Part shown: piece by piece, positions 6,421 through 63,159 of the stretch
Layout: every line of letters starts with the position of its first letter
How positions within the stretch are numbered: the stretch's first letter is position 1
Assembly: GCF_006345805.1 (NCBI RefSeq)
Contig: NC_043013.1
Coordinates: 50,902,001-50,966,000 of the forward strand
Reading direction: 5' to 3'
Source of the DNA: Octopus sinensis
Taxonomy: Eukaryota
Length of the DNA: 64,000 nt
Notes under the pieces: model-generated
Databases searched by the model: none
The model's input: only the letters and a program-made list of their open reading frames with translations
Told to the model about the DNA's origin: nothing
Program-made: the position numbers and the translations under genes

Positions 6421-6826
6421 ATATTTATATATAAAAGAAAGGTTGTGTGTCTGTCTACTCCGATTTAGATTCCTAACTACTCCCACATTTTGCGATGCAG
6501 TTTAACCAAAACCGGGTATCTTATAGTCGTGATTCATATCGAGCCCTTCTGGGTATTAGCGCGTGTCTACGATGAGTCTACGATTTTACAAATAATTTAC
6601 CATCATTTTTTTCCATTTTAATGCATATTTTTTTAAATAAAAAGGGAAGTAACTCTCAACTTCACACCAATATGCGTGCTCATATGCGACGTAATATCAC
6701 ATCAGCAGCATTTCCTCACACCTCCTTGCACTGGGCGAAGGAAAAATACCAGGGGATGAAAATGGTAATATTGCCATCGATTCCATTTGTACCATTGTTA
6801 AGACACCTTCTGATCTCAGATATGCA

Positions 6827-7140
6827 GTGTTCCCAGATCTACAAGCTAATCAGAATATGGATTGGATTGGCAAAAAGGCTATACTGGCCCCGAGGAATAA
6901 GACTGTTCACCATATTAATGATGAAATGCTAAAACTCATTCCTGGGGAAGTCTATGTATATCAGTCTATCGATACAACTCCTGACCCAGAGGACGTCATC
7001 AACTATCCAATAGAGGTACTCAATTCCTTTGAGCACCCCGGCCTACCACCACACTTTCTCAAACTTAAAGTTGGTGCCCTATAATGCTCATCAGAAATTT
7101 GGTTCCCCAAAACAAGCAATGCTGGCACACGTTTGATCGT
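6827..7140 (+). pseudogene. Helitron RepHel PIF1-family helicase fragment
   Basis: KAILAPRNKTVHHIN...YQSID...YPIEVLNSFEHPGLPPHFLKLKVGA, then (frameshift) IMLIRNL. Matches the RAILAPxN / YPxEFLNSL..GLPPH.L.LKVG.PIMLLRNL motifs of Helitron helicases. Confidence 0.9.
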
Positions 7141-7880: not shown

Positions 7881-8819
7881 TTATATAAGTAATTGTGTAA
7901 AAATATACTAAAGATATGAGAATATAAATCATCATCATCATCATTGTTTAACATCCATCTTCCATGCATGCATGCATGGGTAAGATGGTTGATAGGAACC
8001 AGCCAGGTGGAAGACTACTCCAGGCTTCTGTGCCTGTTTTTTGTAGGGTTTTTATGGCTGAATGCCCTTCCTAACACCAACCACTCCCCAAAGTGGGCTG
8101 AGTGCTTTTTACGTGGCACCAGCACCAGCAAAGCCTGTTTTAGCATGATTTTTACAGCTGGATGCCCTTTCAAATGCCAACCAACTAGAATTTAAAAAAA
8201 ACAACAGTCAATTAAATCAGAATTGATTTTAAAAGTGAATGGAAATGAATTGGATTAGAAAGAAGTTGGAAACAGAATAAGAAAACAACCAGGCCCCAGT
8301 TTTAGAGTGAGACATTTTGTGGGAGTAGAAAGCCCTGACAAAGCTGACAAGAGATGCAAACACCTGATGAGACATCAATAAGGCTTGAAAATCAGTTAAA
8401 TCTGTTCATTTTTTCATTTTTCAGAGAATGAAGTAAACTTGATGCATGGCTGTGTGGTTAAGAAGTTTTTTGCTCAATCACTTGGTTCCAGGTTCAATCT
8501 TGCTGTGTGGCACCTTGGGCATGTATCTTCTACTGAAGCCTTGGGCTGGCCAAAGCCTTGTTAATGGGTTTGGTAGATGGAAACTGAAAGAAACCTATAG
8601 TATGTGTGTGTCTTTGCGTCTGTCTTTGTGTCTGTTTTTGTTCCCCACAACCACTTGACAACTGGTATTGGTGTGTTTACATAACATAGCAGTTCAGCAA
8701 AAGAGACTGATGGAATAAGTATCAGGCTTTAAAAGAATAAGTATTTGGGGTTGATTCATTTGACTAAAATTACTCAAGGTGGTGCCCCAGCATGGCCAGT
8801 CTTGTACCAAAATTTGAAA

Positions 8820-11365: not shown

Positions 11366-11706
11366 ACAGTGCCGCGCTGACTGGCTTCCGTGCCGGTGGC
11401 ACGTAAAAAGCACCATCCGATCATGGCCGTTGCCAGCCTCGCCTGGCCTCCGTGCCAGTGGCACGTAAAAGCACCATCCGACCGTGGCTGTTTGCCAGAC
11501 TTGTCTGGCACCTGTGCAGGTGGCACGTAAAAAGCACCCACTACACTCACGGAGTGGTTGGCGTTAGGAAGGGCATCCAGCCGTAGAAACATTGCCAGAT
11601 CAGACTGGGCCTGATGCGGCTTCCTGGCTTCCCAGACCCCAGTTGCACCGGCCAACCCATGCTAGCATGGAAAGCGGATGCTAAACGATGATGATGATGA
11701 TGATGA
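11366..11706 (+). mobile_element. RTE 3'-UTR-derived short element (truncated LINE or LINE-tailed SINE)
   Basis: Tandem ggtggcacgtaaaaagcacc units, then ggagtggttggcgttaggaagggcatccagc...ggaaagcggatgctaaacgatgatgatg, the same tail as the RTE at 48280-48540. Other copies near 7930-8175(-), 15385-15640, 16322-16755, 24270-24455(-), 35095-35560, 37700-38030, 48915-49070(-). Confidence 0.85.
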
Positions 11707-11741
11707 TATATATAGGTGCAGGTGTGGCTGTGTGTTAAGAA

Positions 11742-15164: not shown

Positions 15165-15929
15165 TCTACTATAGGTACAAAGCCTGAAATATTTTGTAGG
15201 GAGGGAGCAAGTCAATTATATTGACCCCCAATGTGTAAGTGGTACTCATTTCATCAACCTCTGAAGGGTGAAAGCAAAGTCGACCGCACTGGAATTTGAA
15301 CTCCAAAGAGGCCCACTTGAAAGGAACTCAGCCACTTTGCTTCCATATATATGTGCATATATATATATATATATATATATAGGCTGGTGCAATGTAAAAT
15401 GCACTCATGGTAGTGCAACGTAAAATGCATTCATGCCACTGTCATGTAGATGCAGCTGTTGTGGTAGCACATAAGAAGCAGCCATCACACTCTGTAGAGT
15501 AGATGTTAGGAAGGCTCATCCAGCCATAGGAACCTTGCCAAAACAGACAGTTGGAGCCTGGACAGCTCTCAGGCTGGCCATCTCCTGTCAAACTGTCCAA
15601 TCCAAGCCTGCATAGAAAACAGACATTAAACGATGATGATATATATATATTTGGACTGAAGTGGAAAATCCACTCACAAGACAGGATGTTGCTAATTCCT
15701 CATCAGTTATCATCCAAAAATTTCACACCTTTACACACTCTCAAGTGTTTCATCACTACAAACAAATCATGTGTGTAGATTGTTCAGCAAGAAACACTGT
15801 GGAGCCCTCATCTGTCATTTACTTCAAGAAAGTGCACAATATCCACCTGACAGTTTTCATCCAAATTCTCTCTCTACCAAATCCGGTCACTTGGCTTTTG
15901 GGTCGACCCATGGCTACACAGCAGAAATC

Positions 15930-16322: not shown

Positions 16323-17169
16323 TGGCACCATTCGAGTGTGATTATTACCAGTGTCGCCTTACTGACTCTTGTGCCCATGTTAGTAGGGTGCCAAAAGCAC
16401 CATCCGAGCATGATTGTTGCCAGAGCAGCCAACTGGCTTCCGTACCCGTGGCACGTAAAAGGGCACCATTCGAGTGTGATCGTTACCAACATTGCCGTTT
16501 ACACATGCTGGTGGCATGTGTAAAAAGATTCGAGCGAGGTCATTGCCTGTATCGCCTGACTGGCCCCCATGCCGGTGGCACGTAAAAAGCACCCACTACA
16601 CTCTCGGAGTTGTTGGCGTTAGGAAGGGCATCCAGCTGTAGAAACTCTGCCAGATCAAGATTGGAGCCTGGTGCAGCCCTCTGGTTCACCAGCCCTCAGT
16701 CAAAATCGTCCAACCCATGCTAGCATGGAAAGCGGACGTTAAACGATGATGATGGGCAGTTTGAATGTTAAATGGTTAAGGCGCTTTGCAGCAAAACTGA
16801 GACAATTCTCATAGTTCCCAACATTCTTGAGATACAAACTACTTCTCAAACTGGTACAGCTACGATGATTTAAAACAATAAAATAAAATAAAATGAAATA
16901 AAATAAAATTTAAAACAAAACAAAACAAAACGAAAACAAAACAGAGCCTCGCAAATGTATAAAATCAAGCGGATGTTGAAATAGTTGTTAGTGACGACAT
17001 ATAAAAGTCAACATCCACCCGCAATTATCAAAACACCCCAACAATGTTCTCTCCTGCTTGGAAAGATCAACCAATGTTATTGTATTTACCCGTTCGACTT
17101 CCATTTCGGTTTAACGGCTGTAATGGTTTGATGTGCAGTTTATACTGTTTCTTTTGAGGTGATGTAATC

Positions 17170-34532: not shown

Positions 34533-35659
34533 TTAACCCTTCTGCATTCAGATTACTCTGTCAAATGCAGTAATTATTTATTCTTTTATCCTTTCAGTTA
34601 TGTAAGTGTGGCCATGCTGGAGCACTGCCTTTTGCCCTTTAGTTGAAGAAATTGACCCCAGGACTTATTCTTTGTATCAGTCTGTTTTGCCAAATTGCTA
34701 AGTCATGGCGACATAGACACACCAACGTCGGTTGTCAAGCGATGATGGGGAGACAGACACAAAGACACACACACACACATATGAGAGGCTTCTTTCAGTT
34801 TCCGTCTACCAAATCCACTTACAAGACTTTGGTCAGTCGGAGGCTATAGTAGAAGAGACTTGCCCAAGGTGCCACACAGTAGGACTGAAACTCGAACCAT
34901 GTGGCTGTGAAGCAAGCTTCTTACCACACAGTCACACTTGCATCTATTTATTCACATTATGTTAAATTAATCATATATTAATATTTCAATATTAATATTT
35001 TAAATTAATCATGGTTCATCTCATAGCTTGGAGATTTTAATGATGTGATTGTTTAGTCTTTAAATGACATTTTGCTTGAGATGACCCTTCAAGCTAAGTG
35101 ATGCTGGTGTCCCGTAACTGGCACCCATGCTGGTGGCATATAAAAAGCACCTTTCAAGTATTGGGCCTCACCGAAACAAAGTGACTGAATTCCCTTCATG
35201 TGTCAGGCCTCACAGAGGCAATGACCAAGACCTTTGGCATTATGTTGTGCTTGAGAAGAAGACCCATTAAGCCGAGCAAAACCTCAGTCATGGCAGATAC
35301 CAGTGTCACGCAAACTGGCACCCATGCCACTGGCACATAAACACCCCCCTCAGTGTCACACAAATGGCACCCATGTCAGTGGCACGTAAAAGCACCCATT
35401 ACACTCTCAGAGTGGTTGGCATTAAGAAGGGCATCCGGTCATAGAAAAACTATGCTGAATCAGACTGGAGTCTGTTGCAGCCTTCCAACTTACTAGCCAT
35501 GGTCAAACCGTCCAACCCATGCCAGCTTGGACAACAAACATTAGCTGACGGTCATGATGATTTTAGAGCAGGTATGAGAGGTGAGATCAGGTCGTTTGTA
35601 GCATAAAACAGATTGAGAATTGGAGCCGGATATAACCGGTTTGTATGTTGAAAAGTTAA
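34533..35659 (+). mobile_element. TTAA-ended MITE-like element split by a SINE A (about 34575-34940, minus) and an RTE-tail element (about 35095-35560)
   Basis: Begins ttaacccttctgcattcagattactctg, resumes at about 34945, and ends ggatataaccggtttgtatgttgaaaagttaa. Confidence 0.6.
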
Positions 35660-37373: not shown

Positions 37374-38309
37374 ATGTTTGTGTTTGTCCCCCCAACATCG
37401 CTTGACAACTAATGTTGGTGTGTTTCCCTGTAACTTAGTGGTTTGGCATAAGAGACCGATAGAATAAGTCCTGGGGTTGATTTGCTTGACTAAAGGCAGT
37501 GCTCCTGCATGGCCACAGTCAAATGACTGAAACGAGTAAAAGAAGTGTTGTGCTGGCATTGTGGATATTGTTGGCTGCTGTTAAGTTTAGCTGTATTATG
37601 TTGTCTCGTGACAAACCAATCACAAACATTTTACTTTATTGAGATGAATAACAATATTTACATACGGAAATTGTTGTTGTGGCTGATGTTAATGCCGTCT
37701 AACAGGCACCTGGCAGCATATAAAAAGCACCATTCGAGCACTGGGCCACATGGAGGTAGTGACAGGTGACCAAGACCCTTGGTGATGTGCTGTTCTTGTG
37801 TTGACCTGTCAAGCCATGTGAGATCATAGTTGTGGCTGATGCTGGTGTTGGGTCAGTGGCACCCATGTTTGTGGCGTGTAAAATGCATCCACTACACTCT
37901 TGGAGCATCCAGCCATAGAAACCTTGCCAAATCAGACTGGAACCTGGTGCGGCCCCTCACCCCTGGTTTACCAGTTTTCAGTCAAACTGTCCAACTCATG
38001 CCAGCATGGAAAGCGGATGTTAAACAATGAACTAACAATGGTATAGTTCCAATTTTCTTGCCAGTCGCATAATGTAGAGCACTGGAACCAAATCTAGTTG
38101 GAATTAAACTATAAACAATTGAGAAAAAGTAGCTTCATGTGAGGGGTGGGTATAATGCTTGTCCATCTTAGTTGAAGGATCCCTTTGAACTCAGGGTTAA
38201 ACTTCAGTTGAGGAAAATTTGTTGAAGTAAGGACTTCACTTTCTGGTGCCAATTTCTGGTTTTCTTACATGTGCTGAGCTTATGTAACTAGAAAAGCAAA
38301 GGGACATAT

Positions 38310-41847: not shown

Positions 41848-43121
41848 CGAGGGGCGTTCAATAAGTAATGCCCCTGACCCACTTCCCATAGCAGTAGAGC
41901 AATGAAATTTGGCACAGTTATTAGTCTTTTTCTACATAAAAACCACCCAGAGTTACACATTTCTCCCATCGTTTGATGCAGCTCTGGAGACCGTTTTTGT
42001 TGAAGACTCCAGCTTGGTCCTCCAACCACGACGTGACTTCAGAAATCAAGGCTGCATCATCTGGGAAACGCTTTCCTTTCAAAAACAACTTCATGGCTGG
42101 GAAGAGGTGAAAATAAGAGGGTGCAAGGCCAGGAGAGTAGGGGGAAGGGGGAGGATTTCATAGCCGCACGCCTGTGCTTCTGATCTGGTGACAAGCGAGT
42201 TGTGGACCAGAGCGTTGTCCTGCAGGAGGAGGATGCCTTTGCTGATCTTGCCCCGCCTCTTGATTTTGATAGCTTCTCTTAATTTCCTCAAAAGTGAAGC
42301 ATAATAGGCTCCTGTAATTGTGGTGCCCTTTGCCAGGAAATCTGTCTTCACTACTCCGTCCTGGTCCCAGAAGACTGTGAGCATGACCTTACCAGCGGAG
42401 GGCTGCACCCTTGCCTTCTTTGGAGGAGGTGAGTCACGGTGCTTCCACTGCATTGACTGGGCTTTTGTCTCTGGATCATAGTGATGGACCCAGGTTTCAT
42501 CCTGTGTAATCAGACTTTTGAAAAATTTTGACTCATCTTCTTGGCACATCTCCAAATTCATCTTCGAGCACTCGACGCGTTCTTGCTTCTGGAAAGGTGT
42601 GAGCAACCTGGGAATCCATTTGGCAGACACTTTTTGCATGTGCAGATGGTCATGAATGATAGTTTCCACAGACCCGGTATTAATCTTGACCTCATGGGCT
42701 ATTTGGCAAATAGTTATGCGTCGATCTTCCAAAATGGCAGCCTCAACTTGACGGACAGATGCCTCATCAATGGTAGAAGGGGGTGACCAGATCTGAGAGC
42801 TGTTTCCACCAAGTTCCGACCATGTTTGAATTCACGATGCCAGCGTTTTACAAGGTCATATGATGGGGCATCATCACCATAAGTTACTTTCATTTCATCA
42901 AAAGTCTTCCGTGGTGTGCGTCCTTTCAAATACAAAAACCGGATCACTGCTCGACACTCAACAGGCTCCATTTCACACTTGACTCGGTTCAAACACCTGT
43001 AAATCAGAAACCACAATTATTTCAGAGCTGTAATTTGCCACTTAATTTATAGAGATATAAATAATTGCACATGCAAACAACTGCAAGTAGGTCAGAGGCA
43101 TTACTTATTGAATGTCCCTCG
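41848..43121 (-). mobile_element. Full-length mariner (1274 bp), irritans-like TIRs
   Basis: 32-bp TIRs cgaggggcgttcaataagtaatgcccctgacc / ggtcagaggcattacttattgaatgtccctcg (29/32 match), TA on both sides. Confidence 0.95.
41921..42971 (-). pseudogene. Mariner D,D34D transposase, frameshifted
   Basis: MEPVECRAVIRFLYLKG (HTH)...KWIPRLL...ITQDETWVHHYDPE...LLLQDNA...PYSPGLAPSYFHLF...WEKCVTLGGFYVEKD*. Frameshifts near 42725 and 42150; the third catalytic Asp reads Tyr. Confidence 0.92.
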
Positions 43122-44705: not shown

Positions 44706-44965
44706 TTAGGCCTGTGAGAAAAGTTAATAGATTCTGTATTGTGTCATATCACGAATACCAAGAACATTGTAAAACATCCAATATCTTAGGTGTGGCCGTG
44801 TGGTTGAGAAATTTGATGCCAAACCATGTGGTTTTGGGTTCAGTCTCACTGTATGACATCTTAGGCAAGTGTCTGCTACTGCAGCCTCAAAGCTGTGTGA
44901 GTGGATCTGATCGAACCCAAATAAGCCTGTGATGTTGTGTGTGAGTGAATGTATGTATATTTTTA

Positions 44966-45012
<47 letters not shown>

Positions 45013-45014
<2 letters not shown>

Positions 45015-48000
45015 CTCCTGCCCACGGCGTGGTCAGGTTGGAAGAGAGATCAAAAGAAAAATACCACGAAAACTATCACCACCACAACAACCTCCTCTTC
45101 TCAGGCGCCGAATCCCCCCCGTCCCCCCCACATCTCCTTCCCAGTTTTCAGAGTTGGCACTATCAATGTTGGTACATTGACAGGCAAGTCTAGTGAGATT
45201 GTAGAGATGCTAGAGAGAAGACAGGTTGATGTATGCTGCATACAAGAGGTAAGATGGAGAGATGCTTCGGCTAGGGTCCTCACGGGCAAGGCACTTAGGT
45301 ACAAACTCTACTGGCAAGGTAACGCGGAAGGTGTAGGGGGTGTAGGCATTCTCCTTGCGGAGGAATGGGTGGGATAAGGTCATAGAGGTTGTCAGGGTTT
45401 GTGATAGAGTGCTTAAGCTCAGGTTGGTCCTACAGAGTGGCACAGCTATGATTATCTCAGCCTATGCCCCACAAGCGGGACTACCAAATGATCAGAAGGA
45501 CAACTTTTATGATACCCTTCTGCAGGCTACTTCAAAGACTAGTAACAAGGACCTCATCTTTGTAGGTGGAGATTTTAATGGGCATGTTGGGCGGGAATCG
45601 GGTATCTTCACTGGGGTACATGGTGGCTATGGTATTGGCACCAGAAATGATGAGGGAACTAGACTGCTGGAATTCTGTGATGCATGTAACCTTTCAATCT
45701 GCAACACTAACTTCAAGAAGCCAGTCTGCCACCTTATAACTTATCAGTCAGGAGACTCCGCTAGCCAAATAGACTTCATCCTCACCAGACAACGGGATGC
45801 AGGGTTGCTCTTGAATACAAAGACCCTCCCGGGTGAAGAATGTATCCCTCAGCATAGACTAATCATCAGTGACTTTAAGCTTGAGGCCAGAAGGACTCCA
45901 AGAAACAAACCAATCCAGAAAAGAAGGATTTGGAGGCTAAAGAACCCTTCGCATGGTCAGAAATTTAGGGACATACTCATCAAGAAATTTGATGAGAGGG
46001 AGGAGGAGCTTCAGACGTCAGACATAGAAGGTAGCTGGGAAATCCTACGGGACAGCTTGTTGAGTGCCACAGACCAAGTCTGTGGATGGTGCAAAGTCCT
46101 TCCAGACCTAGAATTACGTGGTGGTGGAATAGTGCAGTAGATAAAGCCATCTGTGAAAAGAGACGGGCCTGGAAAGCCTGGAAGGATGGGGGCAGCAGGG
46201 AACTGTACCAGATAGCCAAAAGGGAGGCTGGGCGGCAGGTATACATTGCCAAAGATGTAGCAGAAAAGAAGAAGTTTGCCAATGTCCAGCGTCGCGAGGA
46301 TCAAGAGCTGAAGTATTCGGATTGCCAGACAGTGTGTCAGAGAAAATAGCGATGTTATAGGAGAGAAATGTGTCCGCATGGATGATGGGGCACTTGCTTT
46401 TACTACTAGTGAAAAGAAGAGGCTTGGAGAAGCCATTATGAAAGACTGCTAAATGAGGAGAATGAATGGGAGGAGGAGAGCCTGCCAAATGTTGACCCAG
46501 TAGAGGGACCAGCTACCCGAATAGACAGCTCCCTTGTAGATAAGGCAATTAAGGATATGAAACCAGGCAAAGCCCCTGGCCTATCAGGAATCACTGCTGA
46601 GATGCTTAAAACAGCTGGCTATGTGGGCTATGCCATAGTCACCCGCATTGTAAACCAGGTAGTTCACAATGGAGTCATACCCAATGACTGGTGCAGCAGC
46701 ACCATAGTCAACTGCTACAAGGGTAAGGGTGATGCTCTAGATAGAAATAACTACAGAGGTATCAAACTGTTGGACCAGGTGATGAAGGTCTCAGAGAAGG
46801 TCATAACCAATCTCATTAGGGAGAGAATTTGTTTAGATGAAATGCAGTTCGGTTTTGTACCAGGTAGAAGCACCACTGATGCTATATTCCTGGTCCGACA
46901 ACTGCAGGAGAAGTACCTAGCTAAAGATAAACCCCTCTACATAGCTTTTGTAGACTTGGAGAAAGCCTTTGACAGGGTTCCCCGTTCCCTTATCTGGTGG
47001 TCGATGCGGAAACTGGAGATTGAAGAATGGCTAATAAGGGCTGTACAGGCTCTATACAGAGAGGCTGTCAGCAAGGTTAGGATTGGCAACGAATATAGTG
47101 AAGAATTCCGGGTAGAAGTAGGTGTGCACCAGGGCTCAGCCCTCAGTCCCCTTTTATTCATCATAGTCCTTCAGGCAATAACAGAGGAATTCAAAACGGG
47201 ATGCCCCTGGGAGCTCCTCTATGCCGATGACCTAGCTCTCATAGCAGAATCACTACCGGAACTAGAAGAGAAATTTCGGGTGTGGAAGCAAGGGTTGGAA
47301 TCAAAGGGCCTTAGAATAAATGTAGCAAAGACCAAAGTATTAGTAAGCAGCAAGAGGTACTCAGCACACATCCCCTCGGGTAGGTGGCCCTGCTCAACCT
47401 GTAGGAAAGGTACAGGTAGAAACTCCATAAGATGCACCCAATGTAAGTTATGGACACATAAGAGGTGCAGCAACATTAAAGGGAAATTAACAGATAAGAT
47501 AGCTTTCATGTGCGGCAGATGCACAGGGACAATAGACACAACAGACACTCAGAAAACAGATTCCATCACACTCCAGGGAGAGAAACTAGAAGTAGTTGAT
47601 AGTTTCCGCTACCTGGGTGACCAAGTTAGTAGCGGAGGTGGATGCACAGAGAGTATCACCACTAGAATACGAATAGCCTGGGCAAAGTTCAGAAAGCTCC
47701 TACCCCTACTGGCAACAAAAGGTCTCTCCCTCAGAGCAAAAGGTAGATTGCATGATGCATGTGTGCGAACTGCCATGCTCCACGGTAATGAAACATGGGC
47801 TGTGACTGCAGAAGACATGCGTAGACTTGAAAGAAATGAAGCTAGCATGATCCGCTGGATGTGTAGTGTCAGTGTGCACGCAAAACAGAGTGTAAGTATC
47901 CTGAGAGAAATGCTGGATATAAGAAGCATCAGATGTGGTGTGCAAGAGCGACGCTTGCGATGGTATGGTCATGTGCTGCGGATGGATGAAGAGAGATGTG

Positions 48001-48205
48001 TGAAGAAGTGCCACTCCCAACAGTTGAAGGTATCAGGGGGAGAGGTAGACCCAGGAAGACATGGGATGAGGTGGTCAAGCATGACCTCAGAGCATTGGGC
48101 CTCACTGAGGCAATGGCGAAGGACCGAGATCTCTGGAGATATGCTGTGACTACAAAGACCCGGGCTGCTTTCTGCAGCAATTCCACATACCCCTACCCAT
48201 TCTAA
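45013..48205 (+). pseudogene. RTE endonuclease-reverse transcriptase ORF broken by about 5 frameshifts
   Basis: Pieces at 44949-45377, 45355-46140, 46086-46349, about 46310-46556, 46557-48149 (530 aa) and 47996-48205 join into one polypeptide; shifts near 45372, 46097, 46310, 46418 and 48017. Confidence 0.93.
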
Positions 48206-48268
48206 GTACCCCGGATCCCCAAAGTACCCTGGATCCCCAAAGTACCCCGATCCCCAAAGTACCCCGGA
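48204..48268 (+). repeat. 18-bp tandem repeat (about 3.5 copies) at the start of the RTE 3' UTR
   Basis: aaagtaccccggatcccc units. Confidence 0.9.
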
Positions 48269-48637
48269 CCTCGTTGCCCCCGTGCCGCTGACACGTTAAA
48301 ATGCTCGAACCGATCGTGACGATGCCGGACCCTCCGGCCCCTGTGCAGGTGGCACGTAAAAAGCACCCAATCCACTCACGGAGTGGTTGGCGTTAGGAAG
48401 GGCATCCAGCCGTAGAAACTCTGCCAGATTCAGACTGGAGCCTGGAGCGGCCCCAGGCTTCCCAGACCCGGTCGAACCGTCCAACCCGTGCTAGCGCGGA
48501 AAGCGGACGTTAAACGATGATGATGATGATGATGATGATGATATACTAAATGGCAATTGCTAAAAAGCATTCGTGAAGTAAAATCAAATGGCAGTGCACC
48601 AGCATGGCCACAGCTCGTGAGCTGAAACTAGATAAAG

Positions 48638-48676
<39 letters not shown>

Positions 48677-49151
48677 ATTCAATTAGATGTTATGTTGGCC
48701 TCATGAAAGAATGGTGTCATCCAAGGAAATAATGGTTTAATACTGAATATTTTTTGGGGTGATATTAATATCCATAAAATGATAAGTTTATATATAAACC
48801 ATGGTTTATAATCATACGATTGAAAAATAAGAAAATGGAGATATTGAAGTTAATAGTAGATTATTATCAGCAAAAGTTTGATCATTATCCCTAAAAGTGA
48901 CCATTATACCATATATCATCATTGTTTAACGTCCGTTTTCCATGCTGGAGTCTGGGAAGCCAGGAAGCTGCACCAGACCCCAGTCTGATCTGGCAATGTT
49001 TCTACAGCTGAATGCCCTTCCTAATGCCTAACCACTCTGAGAGTGTAGTGGGTGCTTTTTACATTTCAAGTCTTAATGTAGAGATGTTCGTCTAATACAT
49101 CTAGCTCTCCACATTTAATCGTTCCACCTTTGGACTTCTCAAATTAGTAAG

Positions 49152-59319: not shown

Positions 59320-59353
<34 letters not shown>

Positions 59354-59789
59354 ACGTCATTGTCATCATCATCATCATTTTAGTATTTACACTTGCATAC
59401 CAGTATTGAGTCGGATGGAATTTGTCGAGGCAGATTTTCTATGACTGGGTGCCCTTCCTGTCACCAACCTTCACCTGTTTCCAGGCGAAGTAATATTTCC
59501 CCTGAGATTGGACATGTTTTCACAGAAGACTGGAAATGCATGGCACTGCTTCTTATGATGGAGACGCTTTGCTTACAACTAACGCACACTGTTAAGACAC
59601 CATGATCCCACCACCACCACCACCACCACCATCCCCACCTCCTCCAAAGGATGGAAAGCAAAGTTGACCTTGGCGGAATTTGAACTCAGAATATAAGCCG
59701 GACAAAATGCTTAAGCATCATTTTGTCCAGCATCTTAATGATTCTGCCATCTTGCTGCTTTACTACTACTACTACTACTACCACCACCA

Positions 59790-59950: not shown

Positions 59951-60819
59951 TCATGCAGTGTTTTAAATCTGCATTTGTCCCTGTTATCGGGGGTGGCTGG
60001 ATTTACCTCAATGCCATAGCAACTGAGGTAGGCAGGTGCAGCCCACTCCAACTTTTTGGCTGGCTGGCTGGTGCCCATTCTCCTTTGCTATCATGAGACT
60101 TTTTTGGAGCTGGGTTTTCTACAGGGAGCATGCCCTTGCTTACCACTCAACCTCAGTTTCTAAACATGAATGGTCCTGAGACCAAGGCCTCTACCACAAT
60201 TTTTAAGAAATGTGGTGGAAAACTAGCTCAGGAAGGTAGGGACGCTATTCCCTGAGACCCCTTTCAGAGCCCCGAACCTATAATAATAATAATAATAAAA
60301 ATTGTTTTTAATTTATGCAGATGGCTAGCAGCATTTTTAAGGGGAGAGCATTAGATAACTGTATCACTCTCAGTATTTGTCAGGTACTTTCTTTTCTTTC
60401 CCCCAAGTGACTAAAGGGCAAAGTTGACCTCAGCAGGGATTTTAACTCAGAGGGTCAATAGATAGAGCATATGCCAGAAAGCATTTTTTCCCAATGCCTT
60501 AATAGTTCTGCCAGATTAAGACATCACAGAATAGCAGGTGATTTGTGCGACCTTTAACTATGGAAAAAAAAGTCAATAAACATTTTGCCAACATCAAGTA
60601 CAAAATATGTGTACACGTAACCTTAGACACCAAACACAAAATTGCTTTAAACAAATTTATGGACAACAATTAACAATACAGGGAACCTTATTCAGGATTA
60701 GATTTCAGCTGTTAACACATAAATCTATTCTTAGATTGTGATCTATCCAAAGCTCTAAGATATCCTTTTCTCCAGAAATTAAACAAGTCTGTGTCTTTGT
60801 GGGTTCCTAAGACTTCATT

Positions 60820-61255
60820 GAGCTGGTACTTTGCACACTCATCAATCCAGTTTGAGTAATTTATTCAAGAAACAGATCTCTGTAGTGTAAACCAATAAAT
60901 TAGTTATTGATTTCACCTTGCAGTTTGTGCTAACATTGGTGAAGGGTACCACTCTGAGGTACCTATGAGCTGGTTCTTTGCACACTCATCAATCCAGTTT
61001 GAGTAATTTATTCAAGAAACGGATCTCTGTTGTGTAAACCAATAAATTAGTTATTGATTTCACCTTGCAGTTTGTGCTAACATTGGTGAAGGGTACCACT
61101 CTGAGGTACCTATGAGCTGGTTCTTTGCACACTCATCAATCCAGTTTGAGTAATTTATTCAAGAAACGGATCTCTGTTGTGTAAACCAAATAAATTAGTC
61201 ATTGATTTCACTTTGCAGTTTGTGCTAACATTGGTACCACTCTGAGGTACCTATG
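60820..61255 (+). repeat. 147-bp tandem repeat, 3 near-identical copies
   Basis: gagctgg starts at 60820, 60967 and 61114. Confidence 0.95.
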
Positions 61256-61800
61256 ACAAACTAGGTACATATGGAACCATTGAGCATTAGGTCCCATGGA
61301 AATAAAACCAGCATGGAGCTGTGGATAGGACATGAGCTACTGGCCACGCTATTATTGGTCTGTAACTTAATCAACTCAGTTATCTCAGTCCTCTTGCTCA
61401 ATCCTTCATTGAGGTCAGCCAGTGCTCATCATGCAAGAAGTAACAGGTAAATTTCTTTCAAACAACACTATCCTTTTTTTAAAAAAAGAAGGGCACATTG
61501 GATAGTGTAGTCCTTCATAACTTTGTGGCACTATCAATGTTGATGCCTGTCATAAAGAAATTGAAAACATATCTTATCATTGAATAGTTTGCCATTTGAA
61601 AGTTTGAAGCAAGGGTCGACAACTAGAAGAGGATCTATGGTTAAGGATCAGTGCCTCAAGAAGTCACTTCAAACCCATGCTGGCAGTCTTCTCCATTGCA
61701 AGACTCCAGATGAGATCTCAAGTTTGAATACACCATATTTAATGGTGTTTATGGTGTTTCTATATTTTAAAATGTATCAAAAACTTGCCCTGTATATAAT

Positions 61801-62060
61801 AACCTGACGCACCGCTCTACAAGCACCATATCGGTATCTCCAGACAAGCCTATTCCACGGACGTGGTCCTTTACGAAGAAGAGAGAACTCTTCTCGGGGC
61901 TCCCGGTAATGTCTCCGGGCTCACTTGCACTGCTGCTGCTTTGCCCGGTTGCTGGCTTCGATGACGGACGTGCTGCTAGGAGCACGCCACATTCCTGCCA
62001 CCGGACAGGTGCTCTCTGAGTTCGGGAATATTAACCCAATTCCCTTTCGATGCAAGGCCG
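61801..62060 (-). pseudogene. Retroposed 28S rRNA fragment (D7 region, 260 nt) with 11-bp TSD
   Basis: Reverse strand has tcgaaagggaattgggttaatattcccgaac and cccggaga...cgggagccccgagaagagttctctcttcttcgtaaagg, conserved LSU rRNA motifs. ctgtatataat flanks it at 61790-61800 and 62061-62071. Confidence 0.88.
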
Positions 62061-62407
62061 CTGTATATAATGGGTGTTGTAGACTCGGGGGCCAGACAAG
62101 CATAAGTCAGCTAGACCCAATAATTATTATTGATTATAAAATATTGCAAACAAATGAAAATACCACAGTCTCTTAGCACAAACTTATGAAGAATTGCTTC
62201 TGTTATGATGGCAGTTATGCAGAGAGATCATGTCATCTCGTTACACCACCTTAATGAGCATACATTACCCATACCTGATATATGTCTACCATTATTTAAT
62301 GGTTGTGTTACCTTTATGAAACATTTTAAGAATTATCTAAATGGAAAAATTCTAGAAAGATGAAAGGAATGGTGAACTTTCATCTGCTTGTCAGTTAGTT
62401 GAAAGGG

Positions 62408-62800
62408 TGACATCATCATCACCATTGTTCGACCGTGGTCGAGACAATGGAATTTACCATGCTACGCCAGACTTCACGGTCCATCATGGCATTACGGAGG
62501 CCCTGTTGCTGGATGCCTGTATCCCGGGAGATTACATCAGGGTAGGAGAGTGTGCGCCCTCTGGTATCGCGAGTAGATGGCTTCCAGAGGAGAAGAGTAG
62601 AAATTACCTCTTTTTCAGCTCTACAACAATGTCCAGCAAACTGGACTCTCCTACCTTTCACAAGAGATGACACAGGTGGTAGTTTCCCATATATTTGTAC
62701 TTTGGTTGGATGACGCTTCCACGAGAGATTTTGAGCTCTCATAAGGAGGCGAGTGTAGGTTCCATCCAACCGCCTCTCAAGCTTCTTTGATAACTAGAAA
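62408..62800 (-). mobile_element. RTE-X-like LINE 3' fragment with open C-terminal ORF
   Basis: KKLERRLDGTYTRLLMRAQNLSW...YGKLPPVS...RRVQFAGHC...LLLWKP...YPDVISRDTG...MMDREVWR, then a (TGA)n tail. Confidence 0.85.
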
Positions 62801-63159
62801 GGGTATGGCCTGGTCAGCCTGTAATGACATGCATAAGATCTGGTCATCAAATCTAAGAAAGGGTGACAAGGAAACCATTGAGGAACTGCACCAATTTGGT
62901 GGCTGATTCTTGAGACACAAAACATGACAACCAGAAACACAAGTTCTTACATCCTGCACAGTAATTCTCTGGAACCAAAATATAAACAGCTCTTCAACTG
63001 ATCTGAGAGAAGATAAAGTTGAAAACATGACACTTGTATATAACTTAGTTTATTTATGATAAATTAATGGTTTCATACTTTATTCCAGTATACTGTTACA
63101 GCATTATATTTGCATGTTATTTACATTATTTACATTTGATGGATATTTGACCTCATCTT

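What the first reader, a model, noticed from the sequence alone, without database searches (positions are those of the whole stretch)
61790..62071. 28S rRNA retrocopy whose 5' end may record the hidden-break site
Seen: 260 nt of LSU rRNA on the minus strand between perfect 11-bp direct repeats (ctgtatataat), with no poly(A). The 5' junction lies 11 nt upstream of CGAAAGGG. Known: protostome 28S is cleaved in D7 into alpha and beta halves, and the beta 5' end lies shortly upstream of the conserved CGAAAGGG motif; TSDs indicate LINE-mediated target-primed reverse transcription. Inference: RT primed internally and ran off the natural 5' end of 28S-beta, so the insertion is a genomic record of the cephalopod processing site and of LINE machinery copying mature rRNA.
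Basis: partly seen in the sequence, partly recalled or inferred. Interest (0 to 1): 0.7.

Follow-up and report, generated by a model that had tools for sequence, protein, structure and literature searches.

The report
28S rRNA retrocopy with target duplications
A 260-base piece of large-subunit ribosomal RNA was copied back into this animal genome by retrotransposon machinery; such copies are a known kind, and the idea that its start marks the natural "hidden break" of the rRNA is plausible but could not be tested here.

Summary
Positions 61801-62060 (minus strand) are 260 nt of eukaryotic 28S rRNA. They run from 11 nt upstream of CGAAAGGG (the end of expansion segment D7a) into D7b. An exact 11-bp repeat, CTGTATATAAT, flanks them and occurs nowhere else in the window. 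There is no A-tail and no LINE sequence inside.

High CpG retention and stem-preserving differences from other 28S genes indicate a young, faithful copy of a functional rRNA. A 5'-truncated LINE 340 bp away has its own exact 10-bp duplication and a (GAT)n tail. This shows that the local machinery makes duplications of this size without poly(A).

The best reading is a "tailless" rRNA retropseudogene made by target-primed reverse transcription with internal priming. That is a known kind, described mostly in mammals.

The hidden-break claim is only positionally consistent. In the nearest 28S genes I could fetch (73-75% identical, unidentified marine animals), the 5' end lies 1-5 nt from the 3' border of the hypervariable D7a loop. 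I could not obtain the host's own 28S, a mapped 28S-beta end, or other copies. Ordinary 5' truncation or a reverse-transcriptase stall at the GC-rich D7a stem fits equally well. Cephalopod origin was not verified.

The parts
62061..62071 (.). Target-site duplication, the copy at the 5' side of the insert in RNA sense (ATTATATACAG on the minus strand)
   Evidence: Exact 11-mer, one of only two in the window. It abuts the first rRNA-homologous base at 62060.
61801..62060 (-). 260-nt 28S rRNA-derived insert, colinear with 28S from the end of D7a to within D7b
   Evidence: Rfam RF02543 E 7.6e-6. Colinear alignment to eight 28S genes at 73-75% identity, with conserved blocks at 88-90%. G+C 56% against 39% in the flanks. 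CpG observed/expected 0.89 against 0.33 in the flanks.
62050..62060 (-). First 11 nt of the insert, CGGCCUUGCAU: the 3' strand of the D7a helix plus the linker
   Evidence: Aligns to CGGCCUCCCGU (right-anchored) or to the first CGGCC (left-anchored) of the comparators' ACGAGCGGCCGGCCUCCCGU. In folds of the comparators this segment pairs with GCCGG..CCGU on the other side of the hypervariable loop.
62042..62049 (-). Conserved CGAAAGGG motif that closes D7a
   Evidence: Sequence. Used as the marker of the break region in PMC6925239 and PMC4671170.
62020..62042 (-). Conserved hairpin GAAUUGGGUUAAUAUUCCCGAAC
   Evidence: Matches the Rfam consensus with high posterior probability. It differs in one base from all comparators (C to U, giving a G-U pair).
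61874..61895 (-). Conserved D7b hairpin GAGAAGAGUUCUCUCUUCUUCG
   Evidence: Rfam alignment. Near-identical in all comparators.
61801..61820 (-). 3' end of the insert, GUAGAGCGGUGCGUCAGGUU, an internal 28S position where cDNA synthesis began
   Evidence: Comparators continue with ...GGUGCGCUUUCGGCGGCCCUGGAAAAUCC, whereas the insert stops and the duplication follows. There is no A-run.
61790..61800 (.). Target-site duplication, the copy at the 3' side in RNA sense. The plus-strand 3' end ...TATATAAT is the inferred primer for first-strand synthesis.
   Evidence: Exact 11-mer. The joined flanks give the empty site ...cttgccCTGTATATAAT|gggtgttg....

Best explanation
This is a tailless retropseudogene of 28S rRNA. 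Shown: a 260-nt stretch, colinear with 28S from the last 11 nt of D7a into D7b, sits between exact 11-bp target-site duplications. It has no tail, no inverted ends and no LINE sequence. Inferred mechanism: a LINE endonuclease nicked the plus strand after ...CTGTATATAAT. The freed 3'-OH primed reverse transcription at an internal position of an rRNA molecule (...GCGUCAGGUU) with little or no base pairing. The cDNA ran 260 nt towards the RNA 5' end. A second nick 11 bp away on the other strand, followed by fill-in, produced the duplication. The enzyme was probably one of this genome's LINE families with an AP-type endonuclease (APE) and microsatellite tails, not a poly(A)-dependent one. The template was probably mature 28S (the beta half if the host is a protostome), because the copy is confined to mature sequence and looks like a functional rRNA. 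I rate this core (an RNA-mediated, LINE-made copy) at 0.8. The last step is much less certain: that cDNA synthesis stopped because it reached the natural 5' end of 28S-beta. I put that at about 0.4, because the position fits but nothing tests it.
For: 28S identity and exact boundaries. Duplication: (two occurrences in 64 kb; chance at most 5e-5). No tail. No terminal inverted repeats at the boundaries. Young, faithful copy of a functional rRNA: CpG observed/expected 0.89 against 0.33 in the flanks. Differences from the comparators keep pairs in stems through changes on both sides (GC to AU at columns 136:159, CG to UA at 138:157, and others). In-window control: the ORF at 62422-62793 (-) has 6020 relatives, and where the relative is long the match lies at its C-terminus, downstream of RVT_1 and the AP-type endonuclease domain. 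That element ends in (TGA/GAT)n and is flanked by an exact 10-bp TCACCCTTTC that occurs only twice in the window (expected 0.06). So a resident LINE makes 10-12 bp duplications, is often 5'-truncated and uses no poly(A). A second LINE (44949-48543) and about 8 SINE or LINE 3' ends carry the same (GAT)n tail. In 5 of 9 of them the duplication side starts ATAT, ATAC or TTAT, like ATTATATACAG here. Position of the 5' end at the 3' border of the hypervariable D7a loop. Literature places the break in D7a just before CGAAAGGG (PMC6925239, PMC4671170, PMC12880105). The class is known: tailless retropseudogenes with 8-35 nt duplications, made by internal priming, include 10 from 28S in human (PMC5322556).
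Against: The host's own 28S was not available. So the exact junctions, any microhomology or untemplated bases, and the age could not be measured. No complementarity between the target and the rRNA downstream of the priming site is visible in the comparators, whereas the mammalian class shows such complementarity. The target TATAAT^GGG is not the L1 TT/AAAA site. Which LINE did it is not shown. For the hidden-break step, in the comparators the 3' strand of the D7a stem starts 16 nt before CGAAAGGG. If the host is built the same way and beta keeps the whole strand, the insert starts 5 nt too late. In insects the gap lies in the loop tip and beta keeps part of the variable hairpin.
Confidence: 0.8

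Rival explanations
1. The same LINE-mediated retrocopy, but the 5' end is an ordinary 5' truncation. Reverse transcription stopped or fell off inside a longer template (pre-rRNA, or beta with more 5' sequence), for example on entering the GC-rich D7a helix (GCCGG/CCGGC, still paired to the alpha half in mature rRNA). The end was then joined by microhomology. On this view the coincidence with D7a carries no information about processing.
For: 5' truncation is the rule for LINE-made copies, and the LINE 340 bp away is itself cut to about 446 bp. Right-anchored alignment puts the first base 5 nt inside the 3' strand of a 9-bp GC-rich stem, a typical place for a polymerase stop. With left-anchoring, the last two bases of the duplication (AG) equal the bases before CGGCC in L001 and L004 (ACGAG|CGGCC), which would be a 2-nt joining microhomology.
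Against: The end lies within 1-5 nt of the loop border out of 260 or more possible positions. Mature rRNA of protostomes is split, so a template ending near here was by far the most abundant. A 2-nt match has a 1 in 16 chance and is absent in six of the eight comparators.
Confidence: 0.4
2. A DNA-level event: a piece of rDNA (an orphon or an extrachromosomal rDNA fragment) was captured during double-strand-break repair or by a DNA transposon, and the 11-bp repeat comes from a staggered break.
For: rDNA orphons and filler DNA exist. Nothing in the sequence itself proves an RNA intermediate, since there are no introns and no tail.
Against: An exact 11-bp duplication with the fragment fitting precisely between the copies is the signature of a staggered endonuclease cut. 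There are no terminal inverted repeats. There is no spacer sequence, and only the mature rRNA region is present. The length of the duplication matches the neighbouring LINE's.
Confidence: 0.07
3. One member of a multicopy rRNA-derived SINE-like family, comparable to the mammalian 28S-derived SINE. Its fixed 5' end would reflect the family's founder, not rRNA processing.
For: 28S-derived SINEs are described (PMC4994717, listed; cited). This genome is rich in SINEs.
Against: There is only one copy in 64 kb. There is no LINE-derived 3' module or (GAT)n tail, which the local SINEs carry. CpG retention and stem-preserving differences fit a direct copy of functional rRNA.
Confidence: 0.05
4. Chance: an rRNA-like sequence and an unrelated 11-mer repeat.
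For: Another unrelated exact 11-mer pair occurs within 900 bp (D3).
Against: Colinear homology to 28S runs over 248-260 nt. The repeat sits exactly at both homology boundaries, with chance at most 5e-5.
Confidence: 0.01

Closest known systems
Tailless retropseudogenes (Schmitz 2004; Noll et al. 2015, PMC5322556)
   Same: A copy of a non-polyadenylated cellular RNA, truncated at the 3' end, with no oligo(A) and a target-site duplication within the 8-35 nt range, explained by internal priming during TPRT. 28S-derived cases exist in human.
   Different: That class is L1-dependent. It was found only in therian mammals and anole lizard. It uses a TT/WAAAA-like target with complementarity to the source RNA. 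Here the host is a non-mammalian animal whose visible LINEs have (GAT)n tails, the target is TATAAT^GGG, and no complementarity could be seen.
Human 28S rRNA retropseudogenes and 28S/LINE-1 chimeric insertions (Wang 1997; bioRxiv 10.1101/2025.02.02.635956)
   Same: Fragments of 28S a few hundred nt long (median 269 nt in chimeras), integrated by LINE machinery, with recurrent start positions discussed as possible signs of RNA processing.
   Different: The chimeras carry a LINE-1 3' part and poly(A) inside the same duplication. This insert has neither.
28S-derived SINE of mammals (PMC4994717) and 5S-derived SINEs
   Same: The body is derived from rRNA and is mobilised by LINEs.
   Different: Those are multicopy families with a tail or a LINE-related 3' end. 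Here there is a single tailless copy.
Protostome 28S hidden break / gap deletion in D7a (PMC6925239, PMC4671170, PMC12880105)
   Same: The insert starts at the 3' edge of D7a, 11 nt before CGAAAGGG, inside the interval in which the break is always found.
   Different: The break is an RNA processing event mapped by RNA methods. Here there is only a DNA copy whose 5' end may or may not coincide with it. The octopus-specific H88 break (PMC13321053) lies far downstream of the insert and is not touched by it.

Membership tests
Eukaryotic LSU (28S) rRNA, Rfam RF02543 | Sequence and structure match to the covariance model | tested here: met
   32.1 bits, E 7.6e-6, model positions about 1594-1775. Below the gathering score of 50 because only 260 of about 3400 positions are present. 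Conserved blocks are 88-90% identical to complete 28S genes.
Eukaryotic LSU (28S) rRNA, Rfam RF02543 | A complete gene within an rDNA unit (18S-5.8S-28S) | tested here: not met
   Only 61813-62060 matches any part of three complete rDNA units. The flanks are AT-rich unique DNA.
Tailless retropseudogene | Flanked by a target-site duplication of 8-35 nt | tested here: met
   Exact 11 nt, present only twice in the window.
Tailless retropseudogene | 3'-truncated relative to the source RNA, with no oligo(A) | tested here: met
   Ends at ...GCGUCAGGUU inside D7b, while the comparators continue. No A-run.
Tailless retropseudogene | 5' end complete relative to the source RNA | tested here: inconclusive
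   Truncated relative to whole 28S. It would be complete only if the source was 28S-beta starting at this base. The position is 1-5 nt from the border of the variable D7a loop in distant comparators. The host 28S and the beta end are unavailable.
Tailless retropseudogene | The target site is complementary to the source RNA at the priming site, with a TT/WAAAA-type L1 target | tested here: not met
   The target is TATAAT^GGG. The comparators' sequence after the priming point (GCGCUUUCGG...) does not resemble ATTATATACAG. The host sequence is unknown, so complementarity is not finally excluded.
Tailless retropseudogene | Dependence on a relaxed L1-type LINE | not testable with these tools
   The LINEs seen in the window are of the APE + RT type with (GAT)n tails. 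L1-Tx1 families are reported as active in Octopus vulgaris (PMC13282606), but the host was not identified.
LINE chimeric retrocopy (U6/L1 or 28S/L1 type) | A LINE 3' segment and tail inside the same pair of duplications | tested here: not met
   All 260 nt are colinear with 28S. The nearby LINE fragment has its own 10-bp duplication and lies 340 bp away.
rRNA-derived SINE family | Many copies sharing both ends, with a LINE-related or A-rich 3' end | tested here: inconclusive
   A single copy in 64 kb and no tail. Genome-wide copy number could not be tested.
   No mapped cephalopod D7a break was found. The host 28S was not retrievable.
   There is only one 28S fragment in the window, and no eukaryotic genome collection is searchable by DNA.

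The most novel reading that the evidence does not exclude
The first base of the insert is the true 5' end of mature 28S-beta, trimmed back to the D7a helix. On that reading, non-L1 LINEs with microsatellite tails in this lineage copy mature ribosomal RNA by primer-independent or internal initiation and run off at natural RNA ends. 28S retrocopies across the genome would then form a datable fossil record of rRNA fragmentation. In incirrate octopuses this should show a second pile-up at the recently described H88 break, allowing its origin to be dated from genomes alone.
Probability: 0.35. Interest if true: 0.55.

Novelty: new member of a known kind. Interest (0 to 1): 0.33.

Why it matters
The locus is a clean single example of a known process, LINE machinery copying a non-polyadenylated housekeeping RNA. 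It occurs outside the mammals in which "tailless" retrocopies were catalogued, in a genome whose visible LINEs do not use poly(A). Its wider value lies only in the proposed use. If retrocopy 5' ends mark natural RNA ends, a genome assembly alone would report where, and by dating the copies since when, a lineage splits its 28S rRNA. That is topical because octopus ribosomes were recently reported to carry an extra functional break. RNA-based mapping answers the "where" question more directly, so the gain is modest unless the census and the dating are done.

Tried and rejected
1. The Rfam gathering scan of the window gave no hit. The fragment is too short for the threshold, and the E-value scan of the locus recovered it.
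2. The whole-window E-value scan gave about 150 sub-threshold "miRNA" hits. All are TA/TG microsatellite, so they are noise.
3. To get the host 28S I searched a concatenation of all six reading frames of the insert against the protein collection, hoping for spurious ORFs called on rDNA. Only six ENA clusters came back. Their contigs (L001-L008; Tara Oceans and one other assembly) are 28S genes of unidentified marine eukaryotes, 73-75% identical. They are useful as comparators but are not the host. L001 lacks the incirrate-octopus H88 motif inside its 28S.
4. Exact-pattern scans gave 0 hits in metagenome contigs and viral contigs. In prokaryotic genome contigs, one scan gave 0 hits. The other gave 5 hits of 19-26 nt, about the roughly 4 I estimate by chance for a 19-mer in that collection, and they show no further 28S similarity.
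5. Organism identification failed. The exact LINE ORF is not on record. RT homologues reach at most 73% identity and the named ones come from several phyla. The mariner remnant is 88-93% identical to unnamed Logan/ENA contigs. The accession numbers are in no held paper. The abundant SINE looks to me like the common octopus SINE, but that is memory, not a test.
6. The classic mapping papers (PMC311653, PMC341260) are not held. The Natsidis supplements hold no cephalopod. The octopus ribosome preprint maps only the H88 break.
7. I considered that the insert belongs to the adjacent LINE, as its 3' UTR or as a chimera. I rejected this because the LINE ends in its own (TGA)n tail at about 62413 and has its own 10-bp duplication.
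8. The two ends of the insert can pair with each other (-13.8 kcal/mol). However, 3-9% of controls do as well, so I do not build on it.
9. An empty-site paralogue was sought in the window and none was found.
10. An empirical count of 11-mer repeats at this spacing is swamped by microsatellites, so I used the analytic estimate.

Full report
**What is there**

The plus strand reads ...cttgcc CTGTATATAAT | aacctgacgcaccgc ... cgatgcaaggccg | CTGTATATAAT gggtgttg.... The 11-mer lies at 61790-61800 and 62061-62071 and is exact. It occurs nowhere else in the window on either strand. With the local base composition, an 11-nt match at a fixed pair of offsets has probability about 4e-7. Allowing each boundary to slip by 5 nt raises it to about 5e-5.

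The 260 nt in between have 56% G+C against 39% in the flanks. Their reverse complement is large-subunit rRNA. The default Rfam scan is silent because the piece is short. The E-value scan gives LSU_rRNA_eukarya at 32 bits, E 7.6e-6, model positions about 1594-1775. Its apparent extension into the flanks is an alignment artefact without identity.

BLAST of three complete rDNA units against the whole window hits only 61813-62060. Homology begins at the very base that abuts the repeat.

In RNA sense the insert starts CGGCCUUGCAU-CGAAAGGG-AAUUGGGUUAAUAUUCCCGAAC. It runs through the D7b hairpin GAGAAGAGUUCUCUCUUCUUCG and ends ...GUAGAGCGGUGCGUCAGGUU, directly followed by the repeat. There is no A-run and no LINE sequence inside, and there are no inverted termini.

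**Is it a faithful, recent copy?**

I could not obtain the host's own 28S. The nearest sequences I could reach are 28S genes on ENA contigs from marine metagenomes (L001-L008). I found them by searching the six-frame translation of the insert for spurious ORFs called on rDNA. They are 73-75% identical to the insert and colinear with it over its whole length.

Two features argue that the insert has hardly decayed:
- It keeps 18 CpGs, with observed/expected 0.89, while the surrounding DNA is at 0.33.
- Several of its differences from the comparators keep pairs in predicted stems through changes on both sides, such as GACG/CGUC to AGUG/CAUU and GCG/CGC to GCA/UGC. This is what divergence between functional rRNAs looks like, not random decay.

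The perfect duplication agrees with this.

**Mechanism**

An exact duplication that brackets a precisely delimited piece of a cellular RNA is the mark of target-primed reverse transcription. The window supplies its own control:
- 340 bp away on the same strand, an ORF (62422-62793) has 6020 relatives. Wherever the relative is long, the match is at its C-terminus, downstream of a reverse-transcriptase domain and an AP-endonuclease domain.
- That element ends ...CAATGG(TGA)3TG and is bracketed by TCACCCTTTC at 62401-62410 and 62857-62866. These are the only two copies in the window, against 0.06 expected.

So a resident LINE family produces 10-12 bp duplications, is readily 5'-truncated (here to about 446 bp) and carries a microsatellite tail rather than poly(A).

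A longer LINE at 44949-48543 (endonuclease, RT, PHD finger) ends in (GAT)9. About eight SINE or LINE 3' ends share that tail. In five of nine cases the flank after the tail begins ATAT, ATAC or TTAT, as does the duplication here (ATTATATACAG in RNA sense). This is a weak hint that the same endonuclease preference was at work.

The absence of poly(A) is therefore not odd in this genome. The plus-strand 3' end ...TATATAAT served as primer, and cDNA synthesis started at an internal rRNA position. Whether the primer annealed there cannot be judged. In the comparators the rRNA continues GCGCUUUCGG, which does not resemble the target, but the host sequence is unknown.

I considered whether the insert belongs to the neighbouring LINE, as a 3' UTR or a chimera. 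I rejected this because that LINE has its own tail and its own duplication.

**The hidden-break claim**

The literature supports the background. The protostome break lies in D7a between two conserved markers, the downstream one being CGAAAGGGAAUCGGG. Most molluscs have the break (PMC6925239). CGAAAGGG sits at the 3' end of the AU-rich D7a, and a UAAU about 10 nt upstream of the beta 5' end has been proposed as a signal (PMC4671170, PMC12880105). Octopus RNA shows the protostome gap plus a newly described break in helix 88, but only the latter was mapped to the nucleotide (PMC13321053).

In all eight comparators D7a has the same plan: GCCGG-AU-CCGU, then a hypervariable stretch of about 35-60 nt in the three I folded (longer in L001, by my count of the sequence), then ACGA(G/A)CGGCCGGCCUCCCGU-CGAAAGGG. 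The two conserved sides form a 9-bp GC-rich stem.

The insert's CGGCCUUGCAU aligns in one of two ways:
- Right-anchored (as in the BLAST), the first base lies 5 nt inside the 3' strand of the stem.
- Left-anchored, the first base is 1 nt after the variable stretch.

Either way the 5' end is within 1-5 nt of the 3' border of the region in which the gap must lie. That is what one expects if the loop is cut and the new 5' end is trimmed back to the helix, and if the reverse transcriptase then ran off the end of mature 28S-beta. Mature 28S-beta is by far the most abundant 28S species in a protostome cell.

It is equally what one expects if the enzyme stalled on entering a stable GC helix (still paired with the alpha half in mature rRNA), followed by ordinary 5' truncation. 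In insects, beta retains part of the variable hairpin. If that holds here, the true end lies further upstream than the insert's start. A possible 2-nt joining microhomology (AG) appears only with two of the comparators.

One copy cannot decide between these. I put run-off at the natural end at about 0.35-0.4 and ordinary truncation or stall at about 0.4.

**What could not be done**

- No collection of eukaryotic genomes is searchable by DNA. Pattern scans of metagenome and viral contigs found nothing. Scans of prokaryotic genome contigs found nothing or only chance 19-mers.
- The window holds no second rRNA fragment and no empty-site paralogue.
- The organism was not identified. The SINE-rich and microsatellite-rich landscape, and LINE types like those reported for Octopus vulgaris (PMC13282606), are compatible with an octopus. 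That is all that can be said.
- The classic papers that map the break at nucleotide level are not held.

**Comparison and verdict**

The closest known class is the tailless retropseudogene: 3'-truncated, without oligo(A), flanked by duplications of 8-35 nt, made by internal priming. Ten 28S-derived cases are known in human (PMC5322556). 28S pseudogenes and 28S/L1 chimeras are also documented.

This locus meets the structural criteria. It fails or cannot be tested on the L1-specific ones (target motif, target-RNA complementarity, L1 dependence). So it works like a member of that class but was probably made by a different LINE clade. It is not a chimera, and nothing suggests a SINE family.

I file it as a new member of a known kind. 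The hidden-break reading is a reasonable, cheaply testable hypothesis rather than a finding. Its most interesting extension is a genome-wide census of retrocopy 5' ends, which in octopuses should also report the helix-88 break and allow it to be dated.

Noticed in passing
window 62401-62866 (minus strand): A 5'-truncated LINE of about 446 bp. It holds an ORF2 C-terminus (62422-62793) and ends in a (TGA/GAT)3 tail at about 62413-62423. It is flanked by an exact 10-bp duplication TCACCCTTTC (62401-62410 and 62857-62866), whose only two occurrences in the window are these.
   Followed up: yes
window 44949-48543 (plus strand): A near full-length LINE. Its AP-endonuclease is split by a frameshift (44949-45377 and 45355-46140). 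The RT carries a PHD finger (46557-48149). The 3' UTR ends in (GAT)9 at 48517-48543. No target-site duplication was found. The best protein relatives are at most 73% identical.
   Followed up: partly
window 7928-8125, 11450-11707, 15463-15640, 16562-16754, 35379-35561, 37905-38030, 48915-49062, 59323-59469: SINE or LINE 3'-end copies sharing the last 100-250 nt and the (GAT)n tail of the LINE at 44949-48543 (72-86% identical), a stringent LINE-SINE pair. In 5 of 9 elements the flank after the tail starts ATAT, ATAC or TTAT.
   Followed up: partly
window 60819-61235: A tandem repeat of a 147-bp unit, 2.8 copies, 97% matches, about 550 bp from the rRNA insert.
   Followed up: no
window 42094-43016 (minus strand): A mariner/Mos1-type transposase remnant (frameshifted). 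It is 91-93% identical at the DNA level to short Logan contigs (SRR31412027, SRR31412068) and to a 218-kb ENA contig (ERZ25067889) that shares no other repeat with the window. This means either related species or horizontal spread of the element.
   Followed up: partly
window 6695-7081 (plus strand): An ORF with a weak match to the Pif1 helicase 2B domain (E 1.8e-4, below Pfam's cut-off). It is possibly a Helitron-type remnant.
   Followed up: no
window 61801-62060 (minus strand): The first 13 and the last 14 nt of the insert can pair with each other (12 bp with a 2-nt bulge, -13.8 kcal/mol). Only 1-9% of controls do as well, so the significance is weak and the meaning unknown.
   Followed up: partly
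L001 5880-6040; L002-L008 equivalent: In the marine 28S comparators, the D7a loop between the conserved CCGU and ACGA differs completely in sequence and length between otherwise near-identical 28S genes. It is longest in L001, where it is a pyrimidine-rich/purine-rich hairpin. This is the behaviour expected of a segment that is excised from the mature rRNA.
   Followed up: partly
whole window: The Rfam E-value scan lists more than 150 sub-threshold matches to mir-297, mir-466, mir-3149 and others. All lie on TA/TG microsatellites, which fill much of the window. They are composition artefacts.
   Followed up: yes
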